A stretch of 64,000 nt of DNA from Phallusia mammillata (Eukaryota): positions 9,920,001 to 9,984,000 of the forward strand of contig OZ281494.1 of assembly GCA_965637545.1 (NCBI GenBank), read 5' to 3'. This document shows positions 8,396-34,500 of the stretch, piece by piece. The position numbers and the translations under genes were made by a program. Below the pieces are notes generated by a model. That model saw only the letters and a program-made list of their open reading frames with translations, had not been told where the DNA came from and made no database searches. How positions within the stretch are numbered: the first letter of the stretch is position 1; every line of letters starts with the position of its first letter.

Positions 8396-11300
8396 TTATG
8401 TCATGCTATGCATTTCAAGAAGCATGCCAATGTCCTGTTCATCCGGAACTTCTGCAACACCATTTGAACTGTCTTCTTTTCTTTGCAAGTATCTTGCTGC
8501 CGGAATTTCAAGCCACAGCACCAACATGGCGGCAAAGAAACAACAAGTTGCCACGATGAAACTGTACGTATATGATTGCGTTGCGTCAAACAAAGCACCT
8601 GAAACAGTTTTATAATGTTAAACTAGTGTAACTTGACACCAGAGGAGATGCTATGGTGAAACATAACATCATCAAAACTAATACATTTAGGCCAAAATAA
8701 CAAGAAACCCAAGTGTTAATTTACATTCAATAAAACATTATTTTATGAAGTGAGTTGAGTTTACAAAGACGTTTGAGTAGAGCAGTGACAGGAGATGTTA
8801 GTCAGACTGGGCTTTTCAAATTGTGTTTGGGTCAAATCGGGCCAGGTTCGGTGCATATATTATTGTGACCATATGTAGGTTATATAGTACCTGCAACAGG
8901 AGGGCCTATGAGTTGACCACATACGCCGCTGAAGAAAAGGCAAAACCCGTAGGCACTTCTTAGTTGTCGCACGCCTAAAGTGTCCACCGTTACTGGTAGA
9001 ATGTTTCCTTGCCAACTGCCCGAACCGCAGCCGAACACTATACAGTATATTGCCATTGTTAAGAACGAGTTGGCTAACAAGCTGAATGCGCTTGCAATGC
9101 CCATCACTGTGATGTAGATCTTGTGCAAATGAATTCTCCTCAAGTAACCTTTGTCAGCGAAGTAACCCGAGGTCAACTGGGCAATGACTTCAGATAACCC
9201 GATAAGTGAAAGCAACATTGCCGATTCGTATTCGCCGATACCCAAGATTTTAGCCCTTGCTACTGTATGAACCAAAGTGATCGAATAGCCAAATTGTGTC
9301 ATAACTAAGTTTGTCGTGACAACAGCCCAAAGTGGATTCTTTAGTAAAGAAAAGTCCAAGGCTTTTTTCTTCTGGGGTTGGTACACGGGCTCGATCTGTG
9401 GAAAATGGTCCACGATAAGCGATTCGGTAATGCCGTATTCAGTGACTCTTTTTTCAATCTCTTTTTGCTGCTGTTTTAAGCGTTGCTTTTCAGCGAGAGC
9501 TCGTCTTGCAACCAGTTTGTAGCCTTCCTCAGCGTTGTTAAACGACTCTTCGTTTACGCTAGGTGGCATGATGCTATCCCTGTGCCGTTGCAGGGTTTCC
9601 CTATGGTCGAACTTGAGTTCATCTTTTAACCTTACTGGCCGGAGAAGCAAGGCACAGGCGAACAGATGAAGCTCCATTCCAGCAACAACTAGTAGACAAC
9701 CTTGCCAACCGTACAAGTCGACTAGCAGTTGTAGAACTGGGGCGAGAAAGAAAGTTGCCCCGCCTCCGGACCGAGATAGACCGTTTGCAAGAGATCGTTT
9801 GGTTTTGAAGTATCGGCCGATCATCGTAAGAGCGGGCAAAGAAGCCAGCGCAAATCCGAATCCTGAAACAAATAAGTGAACGTTTGTTTTGGTATGTTTA
9901 TGGAATGCCTGGCAGCACGACACATGGAATCGCGCAATTTGGATAATGGTCTTTTGTACAGTGTGGGCTTATAGCACTTAAGTTGTCAGTTAAGATAAAC
10001 ATAAACTAATAACTGGGATCAGCCCTAAAGCGTACATGTAGATTGTAGACCAACAAACAGGACACAGACATATGTAAATCATAGTACGCCAGACATTTTA
10101 AAGGCGTCATGCCGACTCAGCAGGTCACCAAGCATTCTTATATGTCAAGGCGTTAACGTAGGGCACAATGGGGATGCAAGTTGATTTTGCCATATGGGAA
10201 TGCTTGGTGATTGACTGGTTCAGTATGGTGCATTAAATAGGCCTGGCTTAATATGATTTAATATTATGCATGCTGCATTTCGTTGCAAGCTCAAGCTGCT
10301 GAAAATCGCATTTCAGGCAAGATAGAGCAACGAAATGTTTACCTGAGACGCATCCGAGGGAGACATACAAGTAGTAGGGTGAGGTGGCAAACATGCTGAT
10401 GATCAGACCAATCGTAACGAGTGTAGCTCCCCAAGCAACAACCTTCCTTTCGCCGTATTTGTTGCTTAAAGCTGCCGCCAACGGAGCTGAAATACAATTT
10501 ATTGGCGTTCCCGTATAGACTTAACATATGTACAGCTAAAGAACAAATACGCGCTACTTTTGATAGGACTTCATCGTACTTTTTGGATCTGCCTGTTTTG
10601 ATATAAGTTGATGGTTTAAAAATAAAGCTTTTAATATGTTCAAGGGAATGTAAATGATTTTACTTCGTTTTAAAAGATAAACACCAAGAAAGGTAAAATG
10701 ATTTGACCAATGTTTGTGACCATTCTAAATTGTTGTTTATTCTAAAAACTCGTTTTGGCATCATTGCTATCTGACACACCTGGTTAATATAACTCAGGCA
10801 AATGTACACGTAATTTTAAAATACCATACTGCTTGGCAACTGTTGTAACGGCAATTTTTTGAGGTAGACTAAACAAACGAATTAAACAGAGAAGAGTCTC
10901 ACCAGCCGAGGCGCGCATGGAAAGCGAGATGGAATTGATCCACGAGATGGCGCCAGCACTCCCCTGAAAGTAAGTTCGGAATTCTGGGAAAAGAACGCCC
11001 AGGGATTTAAGCATTCCAATCACCAGGCAGTTGTCAATCCACACTGCCACGACGACCACCCATCCCCAGCCTCCATCAGGCGGTTCAACGTATCTGAATG
11101 GAACACATTTTCGAACGGTTTCGTACAAAAATGTAGCATGTCAGCGACCAATAAAGTAATGCTGCATTAGTTTTGTAATGGGGGAACTAAAGTAATCGAT
11201 AAGTTCGTTAGAGCTAGACGATTTTTATCGGTATGTATTAAACCATCAATAGTGAGACGTTTTAAAAAAGTTACAGTTAAATATATGTTAAGGTGAAGCG

Positions 11301-12416: not shown

Positions 12417-15295
12417 ATTGACGAGTCTCTGTTCGTTTACAAGAAAACTGAAAAAAATCAACATCACATTTGGTTAAAATTTCGGAAATTTTCACTTAAT
12501 ATAGCAATAATGTCAATCATTGAACGATTTGCCAGTTTCAAACAAACACCGCCCATTGTATTATTACGGGCAAACACGGTCTTTTGTGTAGAAGTACCCA
12601 TTTAATTGAAAGCGTATTCTAACATTCGTTTGACTGACAGAAAAGGATCATTCTTTATTGTCGGGTGCAGTTACTGCTCATATGATCGATACGGTTGCCT
12701 TGGTAAAAAAACTTACCTTTTTTCATACCACTGGCTTGCAATATCCTGTTCACAGTACAACTTGACAAATACGTCGCGTTTTGAACTGAGGCTAAACGTA
12801 ATTTAATTTTCGCCTACAAAACTAATAACTGCAACAAATAAAAATATAGTTATACACATAAAATCGGAACGGAAATTTATAAAGGAATGTTTAGAAACTT
12901 TGCGAAAACACCTAATGTCAATTATGTCGGATAAGCTCATCTTTGTTTGCAGTTACCCCTTGTCAATAACGCACTGAATAGTAAACTTTACGGAAGAAAA
13001 AGGGCACCGGAACGTTTATTACGTAATAAATATGCGGATGAATGACAAGATATAAAGCATTCTTGGTAAAACACCGGTTCAAACAACCGGCAAAAACTGA
13101 AGCCAAAACTTTTGCACCAAACACTTCCTCTCACAAAATACGCAAAAAGGTAAGAGAAGCTAACAATTTTACAGATTTGTGCACGTCGAAAAAAACTGAA
13201 TAACCACTTTTACAATATCCAACAAAAACGTAACCAACGTATTCATCATTAATCGCTATTCGAATCTGTTCAAATCGCTTGTTGCAAGCAGAACCGCCCA
13301 TGAAACGAGTTGACAAACTTGCACAATCGTCTGCTTCGAGTGGTGCAACGCCCATGTTGTCAACCTATTGCTGGCCTGCGGAGGAGTGTGAAAACATTTC
13401 GTTTGTCCTCCTCCAATTAATTATTGACCCCGGGAAATGCTGACTTGCCTCTTTTCGATTAGTCGCCGAAATGCAAACAACGAAATATAGGATCTCACAC
13501 TCGACCAACAAACCATGCAAATTTACCTAAAACCAACAGGTGAAAAACATTTTTCGTCGAACCCGTAATAAATAAAAAGGCTACATCTATTTTAAACGGT
13601 TTACTTTTTCAGTGCGGCAGAGACCTGGGATTTAGTTTTGATTTTTGCATCCAATTCGAACCGTACAGACTGTTTAAAAATAGTAAGGAGTAACCTTTTA
13701 TATTTCGTGGGTCTGAGAAGTCAATGCAATTGCGTCATAAACACAATCGACGACGTAAGTATTGGTCCGAGCCAACACCTGTTCCAGGCTGACCACGGCG
13801 TAGGCGACCGATAATGCATTGCCAATGTGTCTTTTCATTATCCGAAGTTACCCAACAAAACCCACATACAAAGAATGGAGGCATACATAGCGGGGCAAAG
13901 GTCTTGACAAACACGTGCTCTGGTGGAACAATAACCCAAGGGAAACAAACGAGTCGTATAAGTGCGTTACAACGCTCTACGCCCTTTTAACGCTGCGTTA
14001 CAACGGGCGCTCTTTACCACAATTTTATTTCCGCAATAAACCATTCTGTACCCTGAACTCAATGTACAACATTTAAGCTTAAAGAGATTAACATTTCAGA
14101 TTGATTTGCTGTAAATAACTTTTACAGTCTTGTTTTCCACCTAAATTTTGCCATTAGCTGTTTGCAGTTGTAAATTCACACATTTGTAACAAAGGTACCT
14201 AATGTAAAACCGTTTTGATTGGTTGTTAACCGATGGGTCCCTTACGTGCATAAAACTTTACTGTACCTGCAGTGTTGTATTGAACTATCTAGCACACGTA
14301 ATGGTGCGACGGCTTGCAATTTACAAAGCCCTACAGCTTATTTGTTTAACCGGGTAATCCTTTATTAATGTATTACGAAATCTGGTTAAAATGCATCCAC
14401 GATTAACGTGATAAGTTCTAAATAATCAAATCTTTGTTTCTAAGTACCATACATCGGTGCAGTAGATTCAAACTTTTGTAAGCGTCATTTTTTCATATGC
14501 TCGAAAAATATATCACTGGTCTTGAATTATCATACAGCTCTTTCTGTTGAGCCCTATTTGCTTTTCATAGAAATATGATTACGACCATCGATCGCATCAA
14601 CACTACCCCCATTTTGGCCTCTCTAATGCACCTCTGTAATCACGGCTGCGGAGCCGATAAAGAAATTTCAAATGAATATTTAAATAGTTAACGATCCGAT
14701 GTAGCACCAGACAAGCTACGTGTAACATGTAAAAAGACCCAGTGAAGAATTGTAACCATTAGGAAAAAGTTATTTTAGGCACAAAAAGCACGTAAAACGA
14801 TATACCTTAATTTGAATGATATGCAAAGGTAAGAATATACCCAATGGTTCCTTACAAATCAAATCTACAAGCAAGAGTGGTTTCTAGCTGATACAAAATG
14901 CCCTAAATCTTGTGTCACCAGACAAAAGACAAATGGCTGAACAAATAAAGGTAACAACCGTTTTACGAGTCAGTACAGTACATTGCGACATAACAGATGT
15001 ATATTGCGCACTAAAAGTTTTATGACCTAGGAAGAAGTAGTTTTAAACATCTTTCAGTTTTACTAATACACTGCAAAATGATAACTTCCTCTCGTATGAG
15101 TAGGCTTCACAACACAAGCAACAGCGAAAAACAACTAGCATATCACTCTTTTCCGAAAAGTTTAAAGGCAAATTCTGATAGGACAGCCATAACAAAGCAT
15201 CGCTTCCGCTTTAAAATCAGCATAAAGAATGACAACAAGATATATTCTAATCATAAACATTACTGCCAAGGTAGTGGTGTATATAGAATACATCG

Positions 15296-15335
15296 TGTAG
15301 ACGTTTCGACAATATCTGTTGTCATCATCAGTACA
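15296..15335 (-). ncRNA. Minimal type I hammerhead ribozyme motif, opposite-strand copy
   Basis: Mirror copy in the left arm: TGTA-CTGATGA-T-GACAA-cagata-TTGTC-GAAAC-GTC^TACA. It differs from the plus-strand copy only in the stem II loop. Confidence 0.75.
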
Positions 15336-15429
15336 TGTTTTCAATCAAGCTGTGGAACACGGTATATCTTTTTTTTTTTTTTTTTCCTTAGTGCTTTATA
15401 TACCGTGTTCCACAGCTTGATTGAAAACA

Positions 15430-15469
15430 TGTACTGATGATGACAACAGAGATTGTCGAAACGTCTACA
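15430..15469 (+). ncRNA. Minimal type I hammerhead ribozyme motif (Penelope-like element type)
   Basis: TGTA-CTGATGA-T-GACAA-cagaga-TTGTC-GAAAC-GTC^TACA. It has the core CUGAUGA and GAAA boxes, a 5-bp stem II, a 4-bp stem I (TGTA/TACA), palindromic ACGU in place of stem III and a GUC cleavage triplet (predicted cut after 15465). Confidence 0.75.
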
Positions 15470-16674
15470 CGATGTATTCTATATACACCACTACCTTGGC
15501 AGTAATGTTTATGATTAAACTACTTTTCAAGTCCGTGCAAAGTGTTCCTAAAGATATATTCTGTTGTTTTGATTAGCAGCGTCAAAATCGCCTTACACTA
15601 GATTTTGTTCCTTTAACTGCGGATCTTGGCAACAACGTATTAAACAATGTACAACAACGAAAGCCTTTACATTGATAAACTGTCATAAACTGACGCATTT
15701 CACAAGGTAATTACATGCCCTCATGACTTCTATTAAACGCTATCACCACAACATATTATCACTATTGAAAAATGTAAAATAACGTATTTAGTGCTGGTTG
15801 CAAAGCTGGTAGCAAACTAATTTTGCCTTACTTCGTTGTTAACAGGCAGATACTATGACAAAGGCGATTTTTTTTGTTAAAACGCGTCGCAGCGGCTTCG
15901 TGCTGCTACAATAACTGAGGATGTAAACAACAGCTGATCGGGAGGCGACACGCTCTACTGCGCACCAATTGGCGCTCGCGGTTATTTGCTTCACTGGCTG
16001 AGCCTTGTTTTCATCGGGAATCCGTACGCCAATGCCTTTCCATCGATACAGTGCAAATGCCAATGCTTTTAGCAACCAGATTTATGTAAGAGATAACACC
16101 AATGCAACATCATTTTATGGCATACTAATTATTTTTGTATGTTTCTCCAAAATTTTGGCAAATATATCCTCTAAATGTTGCTTTCAGTTTCTGGAAGTAC
16201 CCTTACATCATAATACCTAATACTTGTCTGAACTCCTTGGCAAGTTAATAACCTTTTACGCCTGCAACTAAAAACCACAATTTAGCTTGTAAAGTAGATT
16301 TTATACTGATTGACCACGGACTGGCGCTGGGCATTGTTATGAACGACGGCGTTCTGCCAAAACAAAATAAGTTCAACTGAGGTCACTGCTTTAGAACTGC
16401 TGTGTGAAACTGTGCTGCATAAAGCAGCTAATGACGAACGGAATCGAAGTATAGTTAACCGATCGGAAGCAATAACAACTCGCTGCAGCGCTGAATAGCC
16501 GCATTGACAAATTAACTTGCTGGCGGCATTGCCAATTCTGACCTACATTGCTTGCACTAGAGGTAAGGTAACCACAAAGGCCACCTGTTGCTCTTAATTG
16601 GTTCGGGGGAATTTATTTAAATCTTTGTTACTAAAATGATGTATATGCTTGGTACGATGGGTTTGCATGGTTCC

Positions 16675-16791
16675 ATTTGGTGCTGTTTAGAAATGAGTGA
16701 TTGTATTGGTCCTATTTGGTGCTGTTTAGAAACAAGTGGTTTACATCGTGCCATTGTGCTCTGTTCAGAAATAAGTGGACTAACAAATGTT
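16675..16791. repeat. Imperfect 39-bp tandem repeat (~3 copies plus a partial upstream copy)
   Basis: Units start at 16675, 16714 and 16753 (ATTTGGTGCTGTTTAGAAA..., ATTTGGTGCTGTTTAGAAA..., ATTGTGCTCTGTTCAGAAA...). Confidence 0.7.
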
Positions 16792-17405
16792 AGAGACACG
16801 GTTTGTTTGAGTACAGGTCATCTATTCGAAGTGCACAACTTTTATTAACGTTATTTTCTGGCGAAGACCAAAGATAAAACAAATGTGAAGAGAGGTTAAA
16901 TTTCGATACAATAGCTGCAGTTTACTTCTTATTAGACATTTGTTAATATTATCTAAGTTAGTTCAAAGGTAATGTAAGTCGCACATAAAATGAATTGTAA
17001 AATGGTAAATGTCCAATAAGAATCAGCAATGGCCAACGAATTTTGCAGAATTTAAATAATCCACCACTGAATGCAAAAAAATGACTTGAGAAGAAGTCCT
17101 ACAACGTAACGCAGACGTTGTTGTGAATTGCTGATGCAGAAATGTAATTTGCATGGTCCAAAGCGTTTACAATTTGAGATGTAGTATGACACTCCAAACA
17201 CTTTATGTGATTTTTACTGACTTAAACTCTTAATATTGAACATTGTATGTCATCAAATGTTGATTACAGACGCGTAGGTTTCAACGTTTGTAAAGTTAAA
17301 TAAAACCGACCGTAAGCACAAACAAAATACTTTCGAGATCTTTCTCATTTCCGGTTTGCATCATAAGTTTTATAACACGTATACAGGTTGACTCCGGTTT
17401 TAAGT

Positions 17406-20400
17406 TTAAGGAGATGAGGCAGCAGCTACAGCGGCTGGAATGCTTTCCTTGCTGCTTGCTCGCGACGAGGCCAAGCTTGATCGCCCTGAATGGCTCCCGT
17501 AGCTGTATCGCTTCCTGCCAATCTTCTCTAAAGGATAAAGCCTCAACCCCGTGTCCGTATCCACAACACTTCGCTTCATCAGTTCGCTGTAAGTGACATT
17601 TTCTTCCGTGTTTGGGTCAAAGAAGGTCTTCAAGCTGTCTTCCACGTCATCCATGGCAGCATCGGTACAAGCAGCCTTCACAATATCAGCCACCTTCTGA
17701 TCGAGCAAGCCCTGCTCTACAGCGACGTTTAGCGGCAGGCGTATGTTTGTTTTGTGGTCAATAATTCCTCCTGTGGCAAGTTGAGCTTCAAGCAAGCGTA
17801 TGCCATGTGATTCGATGACCAAGCCTCGCTCCATTGCCTGGCCCAATGAGAGAACGTCAGGTGAGACACGTGACTTGTACCCGGTGACTGCCCGTTCTGC
17901 TCGAGAAACTACGGTTTCGTAGACTTTATCAAGAAGCCCGAGTTGAAAAGCTTCGCTAACTGACATCTGCCGGCCAGTTATGGGGTCTATGATATTACCA
18001 GTGGCCGCTTGTGCTTCCAGCAAGCTTATAGCGGTGCCCCTTCGTATTATTCCATCTTTTGCCGAACTATAGATTGATTTCTTTTCCCCTGATTCGGAGA
18101 TCATTATGCCTGCAACTGGGCTTGTTCCACAAAGGAAGGGTTTCAACGCGTCCGGTACAGGCTTGTCTTCAACATCACCTAATTCCGCCATAGTTTCCTT
18201 AACCTCATCCGCTTTTGAGCTTGTTAATAAATTCAAATCTACCAAGTCTCTCAACTTCACGCTTCTTCTCCATCCACCTCGAATCAAGATGTCGTCAAAC
18301 CGCGAAAGATCGCCTGCCTCCTTGAAGGAATTCTCTTCTTTCTCCTCTCCCTCTTTCTCTCCCTCCTCCTCTCCCTGCTCCTCCGGACACGTGGAAAGAG
18401 TGGGAGGAGCTGACTCTTGAATGTCGGCGTGAGTAGGCTTAACTGAATTATTTGATGTTACAATATCGAAATCGTCAACGGCCGATGTATGCAGTGAGAA
18501 GTGAGTGGCCTTTTCCCGGTCGATCTCTACAACCGATGTTTGTTTCTTCACTGCTCCTTCTGAGTCCTCTTGATCTGGCATGAATGCATCGTCTGAACCT
18601 CCAGAAAGCTGACATTCTACAATGACAAAATGTATAGTAAGTAAAGTGTTAAAATAAAGATTTGTTTTTTTTCACAATCATACAAAGGATTTATCATTTT
18701 GCGTTGGCTATACAGCAAATTAACAACGACTTAAAACTTTTTAAGCAATACAATGTAGGCCAATATGTACATGTAAACACTAATCAGATGCAAATTATTG
18801 TATAAGAAGTGTAACACATAATTTTAGTTTCATTTTAAAACAGATTTTTCTCTTTTATTTTAAAATAATATACTTGGAGAGTCATTCTGGTTAAAAGTAA
18901 ACGCCAATAGCAGAGAGTTTAATTGCATATACTGACCAAGGTTTGGTCGAGTGATTGGTTCCGGTGTCTGATCTATGGGAGGTCCAGTTTTCTGTTCAGA
19001 TTCAGTAGTTCTCTCAAGAATACTGTTTCCATTTTCTACTCGAGAAGAATTTTCAGGGTTTTTCTACAAACCGAAATGTACCATGTTAGGTTGTATTTAC
19101 TTATTACATTAGTTTTTTTAAACTGCAATATCTTCAACGTTCCCCTTAAACAGCAGTAGTGGCCATTTAGCGAAACCTAATAAAACATACGTCATGGACG
19201 GCTCCACATGCTGTCACAAAACCTAAGAATTGCGTGAAAATGGTAAAAATTGACAAAACTAAAATACAGCAAGCCCTCGAAATCATTAATTACCAAAACC
19301 ATTGGAAATGCATTGAAACCTGAGTATTATTGAATCAACTTTTAAAATTGTGAAAAAAGTGATAGGTTTCCACTTGGTCACATTACGCGGTTAGATGTTT
19401 TTCTCATAAACATAAACAAATTTGATCGACCACATGCCAAGTCTAAATCCGTCCAGTGCTTATACACAAACAGGCTATACAGTTATCAACCAAATCTATC
19501 GAATATAGACAACCGAATAGATCGAATTAACCTGTTACAAAATACCACCACGGTCAGATACTACATTCCCAATGATCTACATAACGTTGAAAACTGATCG
19601 GCCATGATAAAACGCAATAGGGGATCTCGGTCAAATTTTAGTGACATCAATACTTTTCGGATCTTTTAATCGCAGGGAAAGATCAAAATCAACACGGATG
19701 GTTTACGAGATCTGATGGAACTTGTTTAAAGCAACCGGGCAAGGCATCTGGAGGAATTTAATCTCTCCCGCATCTATTGCCTTTCATCAGTGGTTAACTT
19801 ACAAGGAGTAGTTTTGTGCTCGACCCGTACACAACTTGTCCATTATAACCGCAGTAAAATCATAGGGTTTAACGCAGGAATTTTTAGCTAGATAAGATTT
19901 TGGAACAATGGTGGCACAGTTTATCGATTACGAAATTAGTTGATTGCCTATTTTTGGACAGCGCATCTTTCTTGGTAAATGACATAACAATAATGGTCAA
20001 AAGCAGTTTGCAAGTGACAATCATGCTTTATGTCAGCATTGGGTTCAAACAGCAAATAATTAATAACGTTGTAACAAACTTAAACCAAATTGGAGACTAC
20101 AAGCATCAGAAAGCCCAATTTCACAGTAACATTATGTAGAGAGCAGTTCCGGTTATGCAAGGTGCGGTTTTCGGCCCAACAAAGATCAAAATGTTAGTTT
20201 GGTTTTGGTTTACTGTAAAAACTCAAAGCGTGAAACATTGTATACCTGTGCTGTTTCATTTTCCCCCGCCTGAACTTCTGCTTTTAATTCTTGTATTGGT
20301 TTTTCTTCTTCAGCTTTTGTTGTTCCATCAGTCGCTGGTTCGAACGCTACGTTTGTGACACCGTTTTCTTTTCCCTTTCCACCTGCTCCGTCCTGCTCTT

Positions 20401-20865
20401 CCAAAGCGATTTCAGCTTTTTCTGGATCTTTTTCATTTTCTTTCTTTTCTGCAAAACCACAAGCTTCTTTGCTTAATATAAATCATGTTATAGTTTTTAA
20501 ATAAGAAGAACTTAAATTACTCTAAAGTTTAAACAAGAAATGTTTGAGGTATGTGTACTGCAAACATTTTCAGAAACAATCTTTAATTATCCGAGAAAGT
20601 TGGTTTTAAATAGCAGCATTATTCAAATTTATGTCTTTTGTGAAATTATTTTCAATTTTGTTAAAGAAGATCACAGTTTGGAAAAAATGGGAAATGCTTG
20701 GAGTTAAAATTATACTCACGGTAATTTAGAATACTCACTTTCTTTTCTCTTCCTCAGAAACCGGGTACAAGCTGCGCATGACGTAATCACTAACGTCACG
20801 CATGCGATGAGGGCCACAGAAACGATACCAGTGGTGAGGCTTGAATTGATGATACTTGATTCCAT
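17406..20865 (-). CDS. Single-pass membrane protein with a C-terminal plakin (plectin) repeat domain (~555 aa, 4 coding exons)
   Basis: Exons: 20865-20739, 20448-20246, 19063-18937, 18616-17406. GT-AG introns, phases 1/0/1 match, total 1668 nt, and there is an in-frame TAA upstream of the ATG. Exon 1 encodes MESSIINSSLTTGIVSVALIACVTLVITSCAACTRFLRKRKE. The last exon has unmistakable plectin repeats (LLEAQAATGNIIDP, AERAVTGYK, HGIRLLEAQLATGGIID, FFDPNTEENVTY) and a Ser/Arg tail (GSHSGRSSLASSRASS). Confidence is high for the domain and lower for joining the upstream exons to it. Confidence 0.8.
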
Positions 20866-22329
20866 TCTTTTATATTTGAGTTACTCCAATTTCTCAAAAA
20901 CTATCATTGTATGACTAAGACTAAACATCTAGGTTTGTCTGTCCAAATAAAAGATAAATAGTTAAAATCAAACATTAAATTGATTACTATAACGGCACTT
21001 ATCACAAAGAGGCTTGGATTTTAAATTCCAAATACAAAAAGGTTAAAAAAGGCTAGGAAGAGGAAATAAATTAAATCTATAGGCAGAATTTTTGACAACA
21101 GGAAAAAGATTAAATCCATAGGCAGAAATCCATAGGTTTTTTGAAACGTCTGCAAATGCTTCAGCTTTGAAAGTGTAAATTAAATCGGTTTTCGTAACAA
21201 AGAAAGGCATAAACATTCAGTTACATGCAAAAATGCATCAGAACATAAGACTGATAGTCCGTGACAAGGCACACAGTTCTGTGCTACGTAATTGGTACAT
21301 TCGCAGGCTATAAAAACTGCCAACAAATCTTTTAACTACACTTCAAAGCTATTTCACCATAACTGTCACCAATACACTTCAAAAAACGACTATAATTGAA
21401 TTACAGGTTTTTACTCCAATGTTTACCTATTTCGTCTCCATATAACACACCTCGTTATGTTTCGACAGCTGCGACCTGCAACTGCCGTTTTAGCCAGTGC
21501 CCGAAGACATTGGAGACACATAATACTGCTTCACCGGAATTTTAATAACCACCCACGATAGCTGTTTGACACGGCAGCGTATAGACCTCGACAATAGCCT
21601 CATGTCCGTGTCACGGCCAGTTTTATCTCGGCAACTGTCGGACTGGCGAAAACTTAATCCTCTTTTAGGAGTAAGTTTGAACGCATTTGGATTTCCTTAA
21701 GCGATAATGTATGCTTGATTTGCAATTAACAGTTTGTTGAAAAGATTTAAGAGGTAACTAATTAAAGATTTGATATTAGTTTTGGTACTAGTCTCAATAC
21801 GGAAGTATATGTCCGCATAATCTATTTGACCATATCATCTATATTTTATACCACCAGATTATTTTAATTATGAATGGTAATTAGGCATAGTTGCGATACG
21901 ATTTAATTAATTTATGAACTCTTCAGCTAGACAGTAACCCTACATAGTTAACGGTAATGAGTTGAAACTTTCTCTCTCTCTTGAGAGCAAAATTTAAAAA
22001 GGAGGTTTTATAAAAATATGGACACAATATTAGTCATATAGATGCTTTGCTTAAGCTTGGTGAATGGTGAAGAATAATGCACACATTTATCTTGTGATCA
22101 AACAATAAAAATGTTCCAATAACATTTACAGTTCACCTTCTATTAAAAAAAGTGAATAATTTACTGCGCGGTATGTGCAATAATGACTATAACTTTCATA
22201 AAATATTATCGAAACTAAGTTTTGTTCTGTATTGGCCATTAACTAACAAACTAACTTATTTTATGCTAAAAACCGGCTTTCAGTTTTACACCACACTAAA
22301 ATTCTTTATGCTGAAAAATAGTTTTTCTA

Positions 22330-25520: not shown

Positions 25521-28500
25521 TCAGCAGCTAGAAGAAGTGATTTTCATCGCAACTTCGTTCCCACATCGTCCAACCAACAAACGAACGTAGTCACCAGCCT
25601 GGCGAACTGTTTTGGTTGCTCTGCAAACGAAAAATATTTTTTTCCCGAACGTACAAAATGGCTTTACCAAAGCTACAAAAGCTGCTACTTGTATTTTACC
25701 TAAAGATTTTGATTTATTATTTGATGTCTTGGAAATCTTTTTTATTGTTGCTTTTAGTTTTAGCAGATTTTTAAACAAGAACTGTTTTGTGATTTTTTGA
25801 ATAACAAAAGTTTAGACGTTTTGTTTGGAGTTAATAAATTTAAAATCGAATCGACCGATTATATATCGACCCCGTTTTTCTTTGACCTACTTTTTATTGA
25901 TATTACAGTTATTAAATACCAAATCGAACTATTATAATTCATATGATAATTTTCTAATCGACCAATGGTAACCACTTACTCGTTGTATGACATGTTAAGC
26001 AGACTGACACCGTTAGCGGCGAGAATGCGATCCCCCAGCTGCAAACGTCCCTCCTGGAGCCAACATTTAATTACATCGTGGTGCTTGGTGTGACCATGCT
26101 GTAAGTTAAAAAAATGGTGTTAAGAAAACGCTCAAATACAAGTTGTGCTATCTAATACATATATGAGACAAGAGCACTTTTAAATGCGTGTTGTAAAATG
26201 AAAGACAGACAGTTTCCTAAACATACTATTACAGTTAAGCTATTGCCAGTGCACACTCTTTTGACCTATCAGTCTAATCAGTGTAGCTGGTAACAAGAGA
26301 TAGGCCATATGAGCTAATTTAGCCACCTTATGACACTCCAGAGTCCAGCTTACATAAGCTATTGCTGCCAGGCATAATATCAAGTTTGTAGAGCTCTTCT
26401 GGCAAAGTCCAGTTTATTGGGAGTAACAGGCCGAAAAGCCATACCAGCCATGGGGTATTGCACAGATGAGACCTTATAGGTATAAACAGTGTGCACTGTC
26501 TGTAGCATAATTGTTGTTTTAGTGTTTTTGTCTGTGCGTTAGCGAAAAACTTACAAATGGATCAACAAGCAATGCTTACGTCGTGTACAACGAAAAAATC
26601 TTCCTTTGAAAAGCAACATTTTTTACCGAAATGTTTAAAAATATAATGTGCACTTTTGTTCAATAATTTAGCCATTATTTCCAAACAAGCAGCAGTTAAC
26701 AAACTATTATAGATCGTGCCCCCCTTTAAGTAACCCTAACCCCTTAGGACTTTTTTACATCTTCTTACCTTCGTTCCCGGAGCGTCCGGCACAAGTGAAC
26801 GAACATAGACGCCCGGCGTAACCAATGACGTCACAGATCCATCGACCAATCCGACACCAAGTCCGTTTCTACCTTTTTTAATGTCGACGATGAAAACTTC
26901 CTTTGGCATGCCTTGAGCGCCTCCTTGTGGTTGAGGACTTGTTGGATTTGCTTCTGCTGCCGCTAAAATAAAACATTTAACCATTTTATGTTTATACGGT
27001 TGGAAATAACCACATGGATTTATTGAAAATACCATTAACGTAAAAAAAGATTTGTCAAAATTACAAACGTTAATGCAAAGACGACTGAAAAAGTTTTCAA
27101 ATTAAAATTTTATGCAACAGTTTACTGCTTGAGTTTTCGCAATACCTTCTACTCGGTTTGTCGAAACTTGAGTCGCCAGTGACGTAGTTTCCGAAACCGG
27201 AAGTAGCAAGACCTCGTCACACGCTTTTCCACGCTCCTCGTCTTCTATCTTCGATTTGGAATCGAGTAACTCATTGATAGCTTCAGAAGGACTCACACGA
27301 CCAATGAGGTCACTCGCCTTGCGGTGCCTGCTCCTATGCTGTCTGATGACGTAACCCTCGGGCTCTGACGATGATGACGAACAAGATGATGACGAAACAA
27401 TTCGACCTTGTCCACCAACAGACGCTGTTTCTCCGAGATGATGAGTTGACTTGGAACGCACTGAGGATGACGTGTCGCTACTGACGTTGGTTGTGACGTC
27501 ACGTTTTGTGTCTTTGACGTCACGACTAGGGCTCGCGGTTTCTTGCGGAATCTCGCGACCGTCGGGCTGCTCGCGCACGCCCACTTGTGTTGAATCTATT
27601 CGGTTTCGTGCCGGGGATGAGAGGGAGTTTCCCGCTACTGCAACTCGCCTTTGCAGGGATTCGAACCACGGATCAGTGGGAAGTTGCTGAAAGTCGATTC
27701 GCGTCCCAGTTACAGGTAGCATGAGAGGCGGATGCTGATCATAGCTTTCCATCACTAAATCTAACAAAATGTTTAAATGATTAAAATCTGTGGTTTTAAA
27801 CTTGTCTCAATTTTATTGATCATTTGTCATGTGAAACGGGTTTTGTGTTACCCTTACGAACAATTTTGTGCTTTTGAAAACATTATCTAGCATTCTATCA
27901 AGGTAACAGAGCACATTGATAAACAAACATCTTATCATGGTCCCAGTTAAAATAGTGTTTAACTGCAACCGATTATCCAAACACCTAAAATCAGGACAAC
28001 AAAGATAAATGCACCAGTATACTTAGTTGAAAAAGATCCAAACGACAGTTTCAATAATGGATTAAAACCATCAACAACAAGGCTTAAACTGACGATCACT
28101 GTTTGCTTTTTCATACTACAACACAGTAAAACCCATATATGATGGTTTCGTCTATTGGTTTTACTGTTTTTTAGTTATTGGGAGACGACTGCTTTTGGGT
28201 CAGGGCAGTTTTCTACTTACTTGTGTCTAAAGAAGCTTCTGGTTCGTGTTGGAAGGGACTCCATGCTTGTGGCTTAACGTGGTTGTTGGGTAACTGATAG
28301 CCGCTGAGGACATGGTGAAGTTGTGCAGGCTCAAGAGATGGATAGGTTTGCCTAAAATGTGTCCACGAACCCTACATGTATAATAATGTTTTTACACTTT
28401 AAATATTGCAGTGTTGTATGAAGAATCGTAAAAACATTAAAATAATAAAAGGTGCTGGAAATAGTTTTGAATATATATATATATGTGTGCAGGTTTTTTT

Positions 28501-31500
28501 TAAGGTTTGGTTTGGGTGACCGCTAAGTAGTTTTAAGAGACCGCAAGTGTTTCATTTAAATACCAAAAATAGCCATATTTGCTTAAACGAATTATTTATT
28601 AGGCTACTGGCAAATTTTGGGAAACCGCTGGAGAAATTTTAAAACACCTTAAAAAAACACTGTATATGTGTGTTGCATATGCTTCAATAAGGGACAAAGC
28701 ATTTAAAAATCCTCTACAACACACTTCAAAGTGCGGAAAAAACATAAAATATGTGGGGTAATATAGCATTTCACAATGTTACTAAATATCACTCATACAT
28801 GGACATGGCATTTTGTAAAAGAACATAAATGCTGTTTCAATTTTTGAAATTGAAAATGTATAGCACGATAGTAGACGATCAGGCCAATAAACAATTCCCT
28901 ACCTTGGTTATTTGCGTCCTGGGCGTTGCAAGCAGATTAACCAGTGCTGAAACTTTCTCCAGGAAGGTAGTGCACTGATCAGGATATCCGGCGTCACACG
29001 CCCAACTCTCAACTTGCTCCAGGTTGCCACGAATCCGTGCTCCCATATCCCACTTGTAATATCTCTCATTGGCTTCTGTAAAACAAATTTACTTGCTGTT
29101 ATCAATAAAACATTATGCAAAAGAAGGTTATACCCGGGTTGAATGGCTAAACTAGCAAATACGGTCTATATCCTGACTGATGAAACCTTATGGGTCACAA
29201 CAATGTGCACTGCCTGCAGACTGTAGGTAATACCCGTTTCGACCGTGTCAAACTCAATTTGAAAAAGGTTAATAAAGTACACCGTCTAACATTTCATGCG
29301 AGTCTATCGTGTTTACGGAGGTAGACTAAAAACGAACGGTGTTAATGCAAGGAGCGAAACTTTGTGTCAAACAGCTAGCATAACTGTTTCATCAACTCTA
29401 GCAATTGTAACCGAGCTTAAGGCAGTCAAACTTGACCGACCCTATAATAAAAGCATCAATAACCCTCTATTTTGAGACATTTTGATTGAAAACTCTTTTC
29501 CAAAATCGTGAAACCCAATATTTTCACTAAAAACGTGAAAAACTAAGAGCCGCTTACCGTCCTCCATTAATGTGTTGAAGAGTGAAACGTTGGTGAAGAA
29601 GAAAAGGTAGGCGAAGAGTTGATCCGAAATTTGCTGGTTCACGTCATACACTTCCACCATTTCTCGCGCGCTCTCGTACACGCCAGTCACGTGATCAACG
29701 AGTACTCCGTCCGTGACGTCAGAGAAGGGGTTGCAGTCGAGAACGGCAGGGAGGTAGCTGTATAGGGTCTGTGTCAAAAATGAAAAAATGTAATTTACCT
29801 TTAAAAAAGATCGAAAACTTTGATAAGGCAAAAGCCATCCACAGTTTTTAGACTTATCAAAGCTTTCAGTCCGTTAGTATACGTGACTTTTGTCTCCATT
29901 CCTTATACTGAGTCTCTAGTGACTCGTGATTATATAAATGCTACTCACAGTTTATTACCTGTGAAATTGAACACTTTTGGGTACGGGACACATGATTAGA
30001 TTTTAGTTATATATCAAGTCTGTAGGATTTTTGTGTTTTTATGTTAATTACCTTTGTTAGGTAGTAGACTAATTGTTGGAAGGCGTACATCACAACTTCC
30101 TCAAGCAAAGCCAGAATTTCTTCGTTTACTTCAAACTCCTCAATTTCGTCAAGCACAGCGGGATCGACAACTCCTCTGCGAAAAAATGTGTATCTGATGT
30201 GACCCCTCATATTACTGATGATGACATGAGTATTTGCCGAAAGGTTTGAATAAAAAAGCATGTCGCTTTTTAAATCTAGTTGGGCCGTTTTCAACGTCAT
30301 TAAACTTATGAACAGATCCGTGTATATTTCCAAAAAAGTAAACACCTAATTAAAAAAAAAGATTATATAGGGCAGTAGTAAAATTTAAAACGTCATGTTT
30401 TCTTAAAATATGGTACATTTACAGGCAAAGACGAATGGACAACCAGACTTGCACCTGGCATATTATGTAATTTAAGACTATAAAATGTTAATTGCAAAGT
30501 ATTCGTGTTACCTCGATCTTTCTTCGCTGACTCTCTCATGCAGCTTAGGAATGAGATTCTTCTGTAAGAACTCGAATATTTCAAGGGAGTTTGACATCCA
30601 GTAAACCACAGGACGAAGAGAAGGAAGTAGGAGGTTGATGTTGTTACCAAGATCAGGCCTAAATAAAATGGATGACATTACGTAAAGATCGTACTAGTTA
30701 CTAGGCAACAATGCATATGTGAAGCCAAATAAATTTAATGAATATTTTTTTACACTTACGATTGAATCTCTTGAACTGAAACATTCCGAGTCGAGTTCTG
30801 AAATAAATAAAATAAATATTCTAGTTATATTTTTAATGTAACACTGAACTTAAACTATTAGATATAATTTTATGTACCAACGTTTTGCAAAAAATAGGAG
30901 AAAGAAAAATACACGCCAGATCAGCTAGCTTCACATTTTACGTAATGTTACTTAATTTTTAAACATAATCTTATCAGTGAATTGGAAAAACCACCGACTT
31001 ATTGCTAAACTCGAATTTGTCGAAGCTCAAGAGTGTTTAGTGTACCATGTGTGTTTAGTGTTTTGCCATGCAAATTTGAGACAGAAAACAAATGCCAGAT
31101 CAACATTTCACACAACGTTACTTAATTTTTTACTCATAATCATTGAAGTTTTATTCTTACCAACACTAGTGTTTGCAGGTTACTTGCAATCTTTAGCAGC
31201 AAATCGTTTCTGTTCTCCAGCCGGAAATTTAAACACGAATGAAAAATGCACTGACACAAGAGGGCAGCAGGTGCGAAGGGATATTCCACACTCTGATCGT
31301 CCACGTCTTTCAGCGAATCAAATATCACTCGCAGCACCTGGTCCTCACACTCGAGGGCGTAAGTGAGCTCGGTGGGCATGATTGGTTTTGATTTCGATGG
31401 CGATTTTTGAGTTTTCGCCGGAGTAATTTGACTTTTACGCGTTGGTGTTTTTTCGGGAGTCGCAGGGATGGATTTGCTGAGTTCGCTAAATGAGAATTTG

Positions 31501-34500
31501 TTGCTCAAGTTCACGTTCGACGACGGGTCTTTGAACATGAACATGGAATGTTTGCCTATTGTTATCAAGTCGCCGTGCTGAAGAGAGTACTCTGACATCA
31601 CACGGAATCCGTTGGCCGTGACCTCAGCTTTGGCGTGAAGGGGAATCACCGTGACGTGCCAGCGTCTGTCCGTCGCGTCATCGGCATCGCTGAAAAGAAT
31701 TTCGAGTCGCCGTTTCATGACGCAATGATGCGGAAGCACGTCACGCGCATTGAGCCTGAAGTCGGACGCCTTACTTCCGATCAGCGTTTCCGGTTGCTTT
31801 AAATAGTGAACTAGACTTTCCTCTTTTCCTCGTTTCCCTACGTCGCCCTGCAGGGTAATTAAGCACGGAACTGGTGGCGCTTTTTCGACGGAATTCGGCG
31901 ACGCTGATTGGCTGCTTGTGCTCGTTCGGACGTCACTCTCTACGTCAGAGGCAGTTTTTTCCGGACTGCTTGGTGGGGTCGCGACCGGCGGTTCAACAGC
32001 TGCGTTGGAAGGTTCGGAAGGTGGTGTGGGCTCCACAGGTGTCTTTATATAAGTATTGGTCTGTTCCCCTGAAGGCGAAAACACGGGATTTTCTCCATTC
32101 TCTTCCGTGTCTGACTCCTCGCTGTCTGTTTGCGGCTGGTCGGGGACCGGAACACCCATGTGGGTTCTACGTATAAAAAAGTTTAATTTAATTTATTTGC
32201 ACTAAATCAACAAAAGCAAGGGAATGTGATCATAAACATTATGCATGTGGAGCTCGAAATACCTTGCGGTCATTGTGTCAGCAACCCCAAAAAGCACAAT
32301 GTTGTTGCTTTTGCTAAAGTAGAGTCGTATGACGTAAAGACCTTACAAAGTTAAGGCCGACAAGAGGCAACAACATCTGCGCAACGTTTCGTGCACGATA
32401 AGCCTAAATAAGCCAAAAAGTGGTCAAGAAACCGTCATTTTTGCCTGTTGGTGGACCAATTTATTTGAACTTTAGTAACTTGAGTAATCTCAGTAAATGC
32501 ATTATTACCTTGACTTCTGCAATATTAGACGCCTTGCTTGATTGTTGATATCCCGAGTTGCGTGATCCTTCTCTACTTTTTTGAAAACCTAGAAAAGAAA
32601 TTTTGGGTTTAACAGCAGTCAAATAAAGTGATCGGTAACCCAAAATACTTGCCCAACTACCCTCTGGAAGTAGTAAATACTGTAATACGGAAGTTTTAAC
32701 TCAAATATGGAGGGCAAACTTTACTTGACGCATTTTTCACTCGTTCAATATTTTTTTACTTCAAAGAGCTCTGTCAAGCTGATGCATAACACATCATAAA
32801 GGCTGGCGCAGTTAGACAGAGTGGAAACCGTTACCTTTGATCTTCGCCTGATCTCGAATCTTCTGCTGTGACCATCCAAAGGCTTCCAGTAAGATTGAAG
32901 AAGTAGTGGTTTATCGTTGTCGCTTAGAGGACGGACTAAATCTTCCTGGAAGTTGGCTCCCGCTCCTCCAAGGGATGAAGAATCAAGGGACATGCTCCCT
33001 ACAACGAGAATCGAACGTAAATGAAATGAAAACTTCTGCACTTATTTCAACCAAACACAATGAAAAGGAAAAGCTTAGTTTCACTGAAATAAGCTAATGC
33101 TGCCAGGCATAAAGTATAATCAAGTATTGCTCATCCAGCAGTTTTATTGTATGTAAACAATCGACGTTTCGACGTCCGTTACAAGACGTCATCAGGATAA
33201 TGACTTAGTTTCACTGGTCCATTATTTAACCGAATTATTTAAATTATTATTACAATGGGTTACATAATCATATAATGACAACACTATATTCCGAATATTT
33301 ACGCAAACGTCTTTGAATAAACACATTTCTGTTTTGCATTTGTTTTGCATAGCACTTCACAAACTTCATATCCAGCAATTCTTACTTGACGTTTTCTTTG
33401 TCTTTCCGGGTTTTACATTCAATGCTTCTTTCGCTTGGGGTTCTTCCTCTTGTACTCTTCCCACAACTTCGCATAACACAAAGTCCTTGGCCTGCTGACG
33501 AGGGATGCCGTATCGCTGCAAGGCCATCTTTACCAGTTCCTGCGCGTTCGACTGTCGTGTGGCCATCACACTTTTGTAGTTGGCACCAGGGCTTACAGCA
33601 TCGCCAAATATCTTTAAAATACCCGGTAGATTTACATCTGAAGACAGCTCAGCGCTTTTCGTGGGAGAGGTTGACTCTTCAGACTCAGAAGCAGCCCCTT
33701 GGTCGCCCCGTTCGCGGGAAGCAGAACGTGCACGGCTTTTTCGAAGGCTGAAAAACAGTCGTCGGGCTGATGCGGATCTTGGTTCTCGGCGGTTAGCAAT
33801 TGTAGCGTTCTTCTGCTTCTGCTTGACACTCCGCATGCGACCCGTTCTTGTATGCGAGTCGCTTTTATCGTGCTTTATAGGAAGGGTTGAGTACTTGATT
33901 TCGGTCTGAGAACGCCGAAGTGAGGATGTCTTGCGTTCTGGCCGATGGGTTGGAGTCTTTGAAGCCCCATTGGGCACCTTTTGGTTAGGATTTTGGGCAA
34001 CTTCACCATTTCCTAAAATGGATAAGCAAGTATTACGAACTCTTGACACAAACTTTAAACATGTTTTTTCACACAAACTGAATTTAAAGTCACAGTTCAT
34101 GTTTAAAATCGTACAGCAATTACGTTATTTTGGCACCCTTTTTTAAAATAAGTAATCGTTTTACAAAATGACTGATGGTATATACATGGCTGCCTTGTAT
34201 GAAATAGCAAGGTCTCTTGACATAACTTGACGTACCAAATTTTGCCATTGCAGCAACAAGCGGCGACGCAGTTTTTCGTCTTGTATCAGTTGCCGATCGT
34301 CTGATGCTTCCACTACTGCTACCGCTTAAACTTGTCCTACGACGCGGTGTGCTGGGTGATGACGCCATGGAACTCTTGTCGTCATCAGTGTTGTCCGGGT
34401 TGAGGTTAAATCTTCAGGTTAGGGATAATATTATTAAACAAATGTAAAGAGGAACATATATGCAAATAATATTATTTTTATTGATAGTATAGATATTCAT

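What the first reader, a model, noticed from the sequence alone, without database searches (positions are those of the whole stretch)
17406..20865. Membrane-anchored plakin repeat domain protein: a possible direct membrane tether for intermediate filaments
Seen in sequence: a complete 4-exon gene with an in-frame stop upstream of the ATG. It encodes a short N-terminus with an N-S-S sequon, a 21-aa hydrophobic helix (GIVSVALIACVTLVITSCAAC) with juxtamembrane cysteines, a basic stop-transfer cluster (RFLRKRKE), a long acidic low-complexity stretch, one plakin repeat domain resembling the plectin/desmoplakin B type, and a Ser/Arg tail. Only ~4.6 kb without long ORFs separates it from the stop of the upstream RADIL-like gene, leaving no room for the actin-binding, plakin or rod domains. 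Established: plakin repeat domains bind intermediate filaments. In plectin, desmoplakin, envoplakin, epiplakin and dystonin they sit in soluble cytolinkers that reach the membrane only via partners such as desmosomal armadillo proteins or integrin beta4. Inference: a type III (N-out, C-in), possibly palmitoylated protein could anchor intermediate filaments to a membrane directly, as a one-component junction or organelle tether. I do not know of a described protein with this architecture.
Basis: partly seen in the sequence, partly recalled or inferred. Interest (0 to 1): 0.82.

Follow-up and report, generated by a model that had tools for sequence, protein, structure and literature searches.

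The report
Membrane-anchored plakin-repeat protein of sea squirts
This sea-squirt gene joins a single membrane anchor directly to a desmoplakin-type filament-binding domain, a design conserved across ascidians and described in no paper I found, so it may tie intermediate filaments straight to a membrane.

Summary
The four minus-strand exons (20865-20739, 20448-20246, 19063-18937, 18616-17406) have GT/AG borders and give a 555-aa ORF. It reads: 12-aa N-terminus, 21-aa hydrophobic helix, an S-C-x-x-C pair, a basic cluster, about 200 acidic disordered residues, one B-type plakin repeat domain (PRD), and a Ser/Arg tail.

The layout is conserved. Orthologs with the same TM+PRD plan, four coding exons and RADIL / gene / MFS synteny exist in Ciona and Clavelina. 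The same N-terminal plan is in Styela and a nearer relative. One relative's transcript contig carries TM and PRD in a single ORF.

In this species, RNA-like runs hold exon 1 and about the exonic share of the locus.

Best reading: an N-out/C-in signal-anchored protein, probably palmitoylated, that tethers intermediate filaments to a secretory-pathway or plasma membrane. Filament binding is inferred, not shown.

- Plectin isoform 1b is already a directly membrane-inserted PRD protein.
- The 3-13-aa ectodomain cannot mediate adhesion.
- The N-S-S sequon is not conserved.

New here: a conserved NPxY-like motif, and paralogs with signal peptides or a PDZ domain. This scan had already noted the same family on two other pieces of this genome.

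The parts
20739..20865 (-). Coding exon 1 (ATG at 20865). It encodes the 12-aa N-terminus, the TM helix, S-C-A-A-C and the basic cluster. Donor GTGAGT, phase 1.
   Evidence: RNA-like runs hold 0.90 of its sampled words. A homologous exon with the same phase lies in the nearest relative at L004:6188-6305.
20767..20829 (-). Codons for the 21-residue hydrophobic helix (residues 13-33).
   Evidence: KD mean 2.34, no K/R in the N-flank, +5 in the C-flank. The equivalent segment of the Clavelina ortholog is modelled as helix 3-25.
20246..20448 (-). Coding exon 2: Lys/Glu-rich, acidic linker.
   Evidence: An equivalent second exon exists in Ciona and Clavelina.
20342..20353 (-). N-V-A-F, the window's copy of the conserved island ENG-x-x-N-[PV]-x-[YF] (NPxY-like).
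   Evidence: Local alignment of six orthologs. It is a strict NPxY in Clavelina, Styela and the L003 transcript, and NVxF in the window and Ciona.
18937..19063 (-). Coding exon 3: linker.
   Evidence: Third exons exist in Ciona and Clavelina.
17406..18616 (-). Coding exon 4 with the stop codon (17406-17408). It encodes the rest of the acidic linker, the PRD and the tail.
   Evidence: It is 55-68% identical to the last exons of Ciona and Clavelina.
18336..18384 (-).
17520..18308 (-). Folded plakin repeat domain, B type, with its N-terminal extra hairpin-helix (protein residues 256-518).
   Evidence: Pfam PF00681, PDB hits, AlphaFold pLDDT above 90, Foldseek 1lm7 TMt 0.91.
17409..17519 (-). Basic, Ser-rich disordered tail (EKIGRKRYSYGSHSGRSSLASSRASSKESIPAAVAAASSP). 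It is strongly conserved among orthologs.
   Evidence: pLDDT below 55. Smith-Waterman against ortholog tails gives z = 22 (Ciona) and 11.6 (Styela).
25521..33887 (-). Upstream neighbour: RADIL-like gene (RA, FHA, DIL, PDZ in the Clavelina ortholog). Stop at 25521-25523.
8402..11107 (-). Downstream neighbour: major-facilitator (MFS_1) transporter gene.

Best explanation
The locus is a complete, expressed ascidian gene for a single-pass membrane protein. Its N-terminal signal-anchor inserts N-out/C-in, so almost the whole protein faces the cytosol.

From the membrane inwards the protein has:
- an invariant S-C-x-x-C pair (inferred S-palmitoylation);
- a basic stop-transfer cluster;
- an acidic, disordered spacer of about 200 residues with one conserved NPxY-like motif (inferred docking site for PTB-type adaptors, or an endocytic signal);
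- a globular B-type plakin repeat domain;
- a basic Ser/Arg tail (inferred phospho-regulated).

The PRD plus tail most likely binds cytoplasmic intermediate filaments. The protein would then tether the filament network directly to a secretory-pathway membrane, most probably the plasma membrane. It would do so without the armadillo or integrin adaptors that vertebrate plakins use.

What is shown: sequence, splice signals, conservation, fold and synteny. What is inferred: membrane identity, palmitoylation, adaptor binding and filament binding.
For: Gene model.

Expression:
- Twelve small, RNA-like contig sets from three studies hold 0.42-0.48 of the locus words. The coding share of the stretch is 0.45. 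DNA runs hold 0.90-0.98.
- The same kind of runs hold 0.90 of exon 1.
- A 1,968-nt transcript contig of a relative (L003) has TM helix, linker and PRD in one uninterrupted ORF.

Conservation:
- Orthologs P0002 (Clavelina), P0003/P0004 (Ciona) and P0014 (Styela) have the same N-terminal plan.
- The same four coding exons are present in Ciona and Clavelina.
- Exon 1 is conserved, with the same phase, in the nearest relative.
- The RADIL / gene / MFS order is conserved.

Topology: no K/R before the helix and +1 to +6 after it, in all orthologs.

Secretory route: paralogs P0093, P0098, P0099, P0095 and P0069 reach the same final topology through an N-terminal hydrophobic stretch that reads as a cleavable signal peptide, followed by a TM helix and Cys/basic clusters.

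Fold: PF00681, desmoplakin PRD-B, AlphaFold models.

Ligand available: Ciona has cytoplasmic intermediate filaments, including a keratin pair (Karabinos 2004, as cited in PMC5603733). PRDs bind such filaments through a groove (PMC4782060).
Against:
- Only R148 and R199 of the 309-aa piece match the six basic groove residues of envoplakin. The other four positions are Q, V, V and S.
- The PRD core has a net charge of -7 in the window. The mean is -2.1 for the orthologs, similar to vertebrate B-type PRDs at -2.9. C-type PRDs average +1.3.
- The paper on envoplakin calls B-type grooves only moderately basic.
- The window's motif is NVAF, not a strict NPxY.
- The membrane is not identified, and no dedicated TM or signal-peptide predictor was available.
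Confidence: 0.6

Rival explanations
1. The N-terminal helix is a mitochondrial outer-membrane signal-anchor, as in plectin isoform 1b. The protein would then link mitochondria, not the cell surface, to intermediate filaments.
For: Plectin 1b has the same logic: a very short N-terminus, a TM helix at residues 5-27, a net positive C-flank, and the bulk of the protein in the cytosol (PMC2426950). The orthologs here have 3-13-residue N-termini and basic C-flanks.
Against: - Hydropathy of the helix is 1.9-2.3 (21-residue window), against the 'moderate' 1.49 reported for plectin 1b.
- The invariant juxtamembrane Cys pair and the NPxY-like motif are typical of cell-surface proteins. This is general knowledge, not tested here.
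- Paralogs of the same PRD clade appear to carry cleavable signal peptides and so would enter the ER.
Confidence: 0.12
2. The protein is membrane-anchored as predicted, but its B-type PRD does not bind intermediate filaments. It would serve another partner, for example as a scaffold recruited through the NPxY-like motif.
For: Only 2 of 6 envoplakin groove positions are basic. The PRD is net acidic. PRD-A and PRD-B modules have weaker or no basic grooves, and other functions have been suggested for PRD-A (PMC4782060).
Against: - Sequence identity to desmoplakin PRD-B is 42%, with TM-score 0.91.
- Extra basic residues (K154, R156 in GYKSRVS) replace the acidic NDPE of desmoplakin near the groove.
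- The conserved basic tail adds +5.
Confidence: 0.18
3. The hydrophobic segment is a cleaved signal peptide, or a type II anchor. The PRD would then be lumenal or secreted.
For: The segment is N-terminal and ends in small residues (S-C-A-A-C), which could mimic a cleavage site.
Against: - The hydrophobic stretch is 21 residues or more.
- There is no positive charge before it and a strong basic cluster after it, in all orthologs. That favours N-out/C-in by the positive-inside rule.
- All known PRDs, and their filament ligands, are cytoplasmic.
Confidence: 0.04
4. The gene model is an artefact. Exon 1 would belong to another transcript, and the PRD exon would be a separate or differently spliced unit.
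For: No junction-spanning reads could be laid for this species.
Against: - The same four-exon models exist in Ciona and Clavelina.
- The L003 transcript joins TM and PRD.
- Exon 1 is conserved with its phase in L004.
- Exon 1 is present in RNA-like runs.
- The word share equals the exon share.
Confidence: 0.05

Closest known systems
Plectin isoform 1b (vertebrates)
   Same: It is a PRD-bearing protein inserted into a membrane by its own short N-terminal signal-anchor, with a basic C-flank and the filament-binding part in the cytosol. It tethers an organelle to intermediate filaments (PMC2426950).
   Different: Plectin 1b is a giant cytolinker of more than 4,000 aa, with an actin-binding domain, plakin domain, rod and six PRDs. 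Its anchor is one alternative first exon among many and targets mitochondria. Here the whole gene is anchor + spacer + one PRD. The helix is more hydrophobic and carries an invariant Cys pair. No N-terminal sequence similarity was seen.
Desmoplakin PRD-B (1lm7, 5dzz)
   Same: It is the best sequence and structure match: E = 3e-53, 42% identity, TM-score 0.91. The match includes the hairpin-helix that precedes the domain.
   Different: Desmoplakin is soluble. It has three PRDs, a rod and a plakin domain, and it reaches desmosomal cadherins through plakoglobin and plakophilins. The tail here shows no significant alignment to desmoplakin or plectin tails.
Envoplakin and epiplakin (PRD-only or single-PRD plakins)
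   Same: Envoplakin has a single C-terminal PRD, and epiplakin consists of PRDs only. Both show that PRDs work without the full set of plakin modules.
   Different: Neither has a transmembrane segment. Envoplakin's PRD is C-type with a strongly basic groove.
Two-component tethers: integrin beta4 or BP180 with plectin/BP230, nesprin-3 with plectin, desmosomal cadherins with desmoplakin
   Same: The end result is the same: intermediate filaments tied to a membrane through a PRD.
   Different: In those systems the membrane protein and the PRD protein are separate polypeptides, and the membrane protein has a large adhesive ectodomain. Here they are one chain with an ectodomain of 3-13 residues.
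Tunicate paralogs (database names 'desmoplakin-like' and 'PDZ domain-containing protein')
   Same: All have a single TM helix, juxtamembrane Cys/basic cluster, a linker, and one B-like PRD of the same tunicate-type clade.
   Different: Their N-termini differ: an apparent signal peptide plus short ectodomain, or a longer N-terminal helix. Their tails differ too, and one (P0069) has an added PDZ domain. This gene's group is a separate clade with 99% SH-aLRT support.

Membership tests
Plakin repeat domain (Pfam PF00681; B-type PRD) | Sequence match to the plectin-repeat profile above Pfam's gathering score | tested here: met
   118.7 bits against a cut-off of 20.5, E = 8.6e-35.
Plakin repeat domain (Pfam PF00681; B-type PRD) | Globular fold of about 4.5 plakin repeats, superposable on solved PRDs and closest to the B type | tested here: met
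   AlphaFold pLDDT 88. Foldseek gives 1lm7 TMt 0.91 and 5dzz E = 1e-23, with C-type PRDs lower. By phmmer, PRD-B scores 185 bits against 78-100 bits for C types.
Plakin repeat domain (Pfam PF00681; B-type PRD) | Basic groove residues needed for vimentin binding (envoplakin R1876, R1895, K1901, R1914, R1952, K1994) | tested here: inconclusive
   These map to Q123, V142, R148, V161, R199 and S250 of the 309-aa piece, so 2 of 6 are basic. Position 123 is K in other orthologs. By the same alignment, human desmoplakin PRD-B has 4 of 6.
Plakin repeat domain (Pfam PF00681; B-type PRD) | Binds intermediate filaments | not testable with these tools
   Needs co-sedimentation or co-localisation experiments.
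Plakin family cytolinkers (plectin, desmoplakin, BPAG1, envoplakin, periplakin) | N-terminal plakin domain (spectrin repeats with SH3) and a coiled-coil rod | tested here: not met
   Pfam finds only PF00681 in exon 4 and nothing significant in exon 1. Exons 2 and 3 (about 110 residues) were not scanned on their own. The linker is modelled as disordered in the Clavelina ortholog. No long ORF lies in the 4,655 nt up to the RADIL-like stop.
N-terminal signal-anchored (N-out/C-in) single-pass membrane proteins | One hydrophobic segment of about 20 residues near the N-terminus | tested here: met
   KD mean 2.34 over residues 13-33, and 1.9-2.3 in five orthologs. Modelled as helix 3-25 in the Clavelina ortholog.
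N-terminal signal-anchored (N-out/C-in) single-pass membrane proteins | Charge asymmetry: positive residues on the cytosolic (C-terminal) side | tested here: met
   N-flank has no K/R. C-flank is +5 in the window and +1 to +6 in orthologs.
N-terminal signal-anchored (N-out/C-in) single-pass membrane proteins | Integral membrane insertion and topology shown experimentally or by a dedicated predictor | not testable with these tools
   DeepTMHMM, Phobius and SignalP were not available.
Mitochondrial outer-membrane signal-anchor of the plectin 1b / Tom20 type | Moderate TM hydrophobicity (plectin 1b: 1.49) with a net positive C-flank | tested here: inconclusive
   The C-flank is positive, but hydropathy is 1.9-2.3, above plectin 1b. 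The window lengths differ (21 against 23 residues).
NPxY / PTB-binding motif | Conserved hydrophobic-x-N-P-x-Y in a cytoplasmic tail | tested here: inconclusive
   The aligned island is ENG-x-x-N-[PV]-x-[YF] in six orthologs. It is a strict NPxY in three (FNNPAY, IANPSY, IMNPGY) and NVxF in the window and Ciona.

The most novel reading that the evidence does not exclude
Tunicates lack the vertebrate desmosomal cadherin and plakophilin machinery. They may have evolved their own family of one-chain 'membrane plakins': single-pass proteins with almost no ectodomain that couple intermediate filaments directly to the plasma membrane. This gene would be the minimal member. It would be held in place by palmitoylation, and coupled to adhesion receptors or to endocytosis through its NPxY-like motif. 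That would be an independent solution to filament-to-membrane anchorage in the sister group of vertebrates.
Probability: 0.4. Interest if true: 0.78.

Novelty: new variant of a known kind. Interest (0 to 1): 0.62.

Why it matters
Intermediate filaments are thought to reach membranes through multi-protein plaques: desmosomes, hemidesmosomes, or nesprin-3 with plectin. Desmosomal cadherins and plakophilins are vertebrate innovations (PMC3013132; PMC11317759). Yet ascidians have keratin-like filaments.

A conserved family that fuses a bare membrane anchor to the filament-binding module would show how the closest relatives of vertebrates solve this problem with one polypeptide. It would also provide a minimal, genetically tractable tether. 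Ciona embryos can be electroporated, so such a tether could be used to test what PRD-B modules and their Ser/Arg tails do. It also bears on how the PRD was redeployed after the tunicate-vertebrate split.

Tried and rejected
After that I sent only window:17409-18335 or parts outside those places to search tools. Local scripts that only aligned or printed the spliced protein (for example) still held them.
2. Homology of the Ser/Arg tail to the regulatory C-terminal tails of plectin or desmoplakin. BLASTP found no alignment. Smith-Waterman scores were within shuffle noise, z at most 1.7. The resemblance is compositional only, so this was rejected.
3. ESM Atlas look-up of the Ciona ortholog gave no usable hit.
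4. Literature searches found nothing on this architecture: plakin repeat + Ciona; plakin + ascidian + transmembrane; LOC100182972; desmoplakin + Ciona/tunicate; 'transmembrane plakin' and similar phrases. Green et al. 2020 (PMC7310670) is not held, so I could not check it.
5. N-glycosylation of N-S-S. It is not conserved and lies too close to the helix, so it was dropped.
6. I did not run the large representative-protein search. Multi-PRD plakins would fill its top 150 hits, and it gives no taxonomy. Absence of TM+PRD proteins outside tunicates is therefore not established.
7. Rfam at gathering threshold on 14000-17400 found nothing.
Full report

Yes. Spliced in a script, they are 127, 203, 127 and 1,211 nt long. 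Each intron starts with GT and ends with AG. The product is one 1,668-nt ORF of 555 aa, with in-frame stops upstream of the ATG at 20865.

The N-terminus is MESSIINSSLTT, then GIVSVALIACVTLVITSCAAC, then TRFLRKRKEKKKE. The helix has a mean Kyte-Doolittle value of 2.34. There is no K or R before it, and the next 15 residues carry +5. Residues 43-245 are acidic, with 49 D+E against 22 K+R.

The upstream RADIL-like gene stops at 25521-25523. That is 4,655 nt from the ATG, and no ORF there is longer than 93 aa.

**2. The domain**

- Exon 4 matches Pfam PF00681 at 118.7 bits against a cut-off of 20.5.
- Against solved structures the best match is desmoplakin PRD-B: 1lm7 at E = 3e-53 and 5dzz at E = 4e-86. 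The C-type PRDs of plectin, desmoplakin and envoplakin score only 77-100 bits.
- AlphaFold on the last 309 residues, with 30 aligned relatives, gives pLDDT 88. Residues 10-272 of the piece are folded and residues 276-309 are disordered.
- Foldseek places the model on 1lm7 with TM-score 0.91 normalised to the target and 42% identity.

So 'one B-type PRD' is correct. The domain includes the extra hairpin-helix that also precedes desmoplakin PRD-B.

**3. Is it one gene, and is it expressed?**

I therefore have no junction reads for this species.

Indirect evidence from this species:
- Twelve small contig sets (20-33 Mb, guessed RNA) from three studies hold 0.42-0.48 of the sampled words of 17300-21000. 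The coding exons make up 0.45 of that stretch. DNA runs hold 0.90-0.98.
- Runs of the same three studies, several of them the same runs, hold 0.90 of the words of exon 1 alone.

Evidence from relatives:
- The annotated Ciona intestinalis (P0003) and Clavelina lepadiformis (P0002) genes have the same four coding exons: TM exon, two short linker exons and one long PRD exon.
- A 1,968-nt transcript contig of another ascidian (L003) carries MLE-LAAIAISAVFMFTISMVLFSCASC-RKLFEKK, the linker and the PRD in one uninterrupted ORF.
- In a genomic contig of the nearest relative (L004), an exon at 6188-6305 encodes MIANYSLSVLVSAALLVSVSMVLVSCTTCWKKIRGKKDK. It has a GTGAGT donor and the same phase 1 as the window's exon 1.
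- The gene order RADIL (RA/FHA/DIL/PDZ), then this gene, then an MFS transporter, all on one strand, is shared by the window, Ciona and Clavelina.

**4. What is conserved**

Across six orthologs (window, L004, Clavelina, Ciona, Styela, L003), the following holds:
- The N-terminus before the helix is 3-13 residues long and has no basic residue.
- The helix has hydropathy 1.9-2.3.
- It ends in an invariant S-C-x-x-C.
- A basic cluster follows.

The linker is otherwise poorly conserved. It does contain one aligned island, ENG-x-x-N-[PV]-x-[YF]. This reads FNNPAY in Clavelina, IANPSY in Styela and IMNPGY in L003. It reads VTNVAF in the window and TENVSF in Ciona. It looks like an NPxY-type motif.

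The PRD and the tail (consensus YSGRSSLASSRxxSxExIPxAVAA) are strongly conserved.

A full-length AlphaFold model of the Clavelina ortholog shows:
- helix 3-25;
- disorder at 28-203;
- the folded PRD from about residue 205 to 469;
- a disordered tail.

**5. The wider family**

The homology search also returned other tunicate single-PRD proteins with a membrane anchor.

- One group is named 'desmoplakin-like' in databases: P0073 (Ciona), P0080 (Phallusia), P0072 (Styela), and the unnamed P0090, P0093, P0095, P0098 and P0099.
- In that group, P0093, P0095, P0098 and P0099 start with a hydrophobic stretch that reads as a cleavable signal peptide. An ectodomain of about 10-15 residues follows, then a TM helix and Cys/Arg/Lys clusters.
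- A second group includes Clavelina P0069, which has signal peptide + TM + PDZ + PRD.

I built a tree of 154 PRD modules:
- This gene's group is monophyletic (99% SH-aLRT).
- It sits inside a 96-97% supported clade whose named members are all tunicate.
- That clade is sister to the vertebrate B-type PRDs of plectin, epiplakin and desmoplakin.
- C-type PRDs lie outside.
- The unnamed members of the clade could not be assigned to a taxon.

This scan's earlier notes report the same family on two other pieces of this genome: a four-PRD single-pass protein and a three-gene cluster. I did not re-examine those loci, but they agree with the paralogs I found independently.

**6. How it most likely works**

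By the positive-inside rule, the helix inserts N-out/C-in. Paralogs reach the same final topology through apparent cleavable signal peptides, so the family most likely uses the ER and secretory route. This points to the plasma membrane or an endomembrane rather than mitochondria.

Two features are typical of cell-surface proteins: the invariant Cys pair at the cytosolic face (S-palmitoylation) and the NPxY-like motif (PTB-adaptor docking or endocytic sorting). Both readings are inference.

The PRD plus the basic tail would bind cytoplasmic intermediate filaments, which Ciona has. The disordered spacer of about 200 residues would let the PRD reach tens of nanometres from the membrane.

Because the ectodomain is only 3-13 residues, the protein cannot itself be an adhesion receptor. 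It is a tether, possibly working beside other membrane proteins.

**7. Caveats on filament binding**

Six basic groove residues of envoplakin were shown to matter for vimentin binding (PMC4782060). Only the equivalents of K1901 (R148) and R1952 (R199) are basic here. R1876 maps to Q, which is K in other orthologs. R1895, R1914 and K1994 map to V, V and S.

The PRD core is net -7 in the window. The orthologs average -2.1, vertebrate B-type PRDs -2.9 and C-type PRDs +1.3. The same paper describes B-type grooves as only moderately basic.

Two things may compensate. Basic residues in the PR3 loop (GYKSRVS, against GYNDPET in desmoplakin) lie near the groove, and the tail adds +5. This is untested.

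**8. Comparison with what is known**

[quoted passage not shown] Its TM helix spans residues 5-27, with hydropathy 1.49 and a positive C-flank, and it links mitochondria to filaments (PMC2426950).

That is the closest functional precedent, and it is also the main rival for which membrane is involved. The present protein differs in four ways:
- It is a dedicated small gene: anchor + spacer + one PRD.
- It has a more hydrophobic helix.
- It has the Cys pair and the NPxY-like motif.
- It belongs to a tunicate-type gene family.

It is a member of the PRD superfamily. It is not a member of the plakin cytolinker family in the strict sense, because it has no plakin domain and no rod.

**9. Novelty**

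Orthologs sit in public databases as 'uncharacterized protein LOC100182972', 'plectin-like' or 'desmoplakin-like'. Five full-text searches found no paper describing a transmembrane PRD protein. One relevant review, Green et al. 2020, is not held.

I did not establish absence outside tunicates. I rate the finding as a new variant of a known kind.

**10. Verdict**

- Confidence in the best explanation as a whole: 0.6.
- Confidence that the TM+PRD architecture is real and conserved: about 0.9.
- Interest: 0.62.

Noticed in passing
window 25521-33887 (minus strand): RADIL-like gene (RA, FHA, DIL, PDZ in the Clavelina ortholog) lies directly upstream on the same strand. Its adjacency to the TM-PRD gene is conserved in Ciona and Clavelina.
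   Followed up: partly
window 8402-11107 (minus strand): Major-facilitator (MFS_1) transporter gene, 72% identical over its largest exon to the Ciona and Clavelina genes that occupy the same downstream position.
   Followed up: partly
window 15248-15517: Another first-reader note reports a 270-bp fold-back with hammerhead motifs here. An Rfam scan of 14000-17400 at gathering threshold found no family, hammerhead included. I did not fold it or scan at a laxer threshold.
   Followed up: partly
P0069 (Clavelina lepadiformis, 672 aa): A paralog that combines signal peptide, short ectodomain with an N-R-T sequon, TM helix, Cys/Lys cluster, a region the database names a PDZ domain, and one PRD. It would be a membrane plakin with a built-in PDZ scaffold.
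   Followed up: no
P0073, P0080, P0072, P0069 (first 80 residues): Several paralogs carry [AG]-Y-[DE]-N-[PV] about 25-35 residues after the TM helix. It recalls the GYENPTY-type motif of other single-pass receptors and parallels the N-[PV]-x-[YF] island of this gene.
   Followed up: no
runs X15-X20: RNA-like runs of two further studies of the same organism hold none of the locus words, while three studies hold the exonic share. Expression is probably stage- or tissue-restricted. The sample identities are coded and could not be read.
   Followed up: no
L004-L007 (ENA ERZ272417xx and JGI 3300001913 metagenome contigs): The closest relative of the window's gene (83% identity in the PRD) lies on 57-68 kb contigs filed as metagenomes. 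This is evidently ascidian host DNA inside host-associated metagenome assemblies.
   Followed up: no
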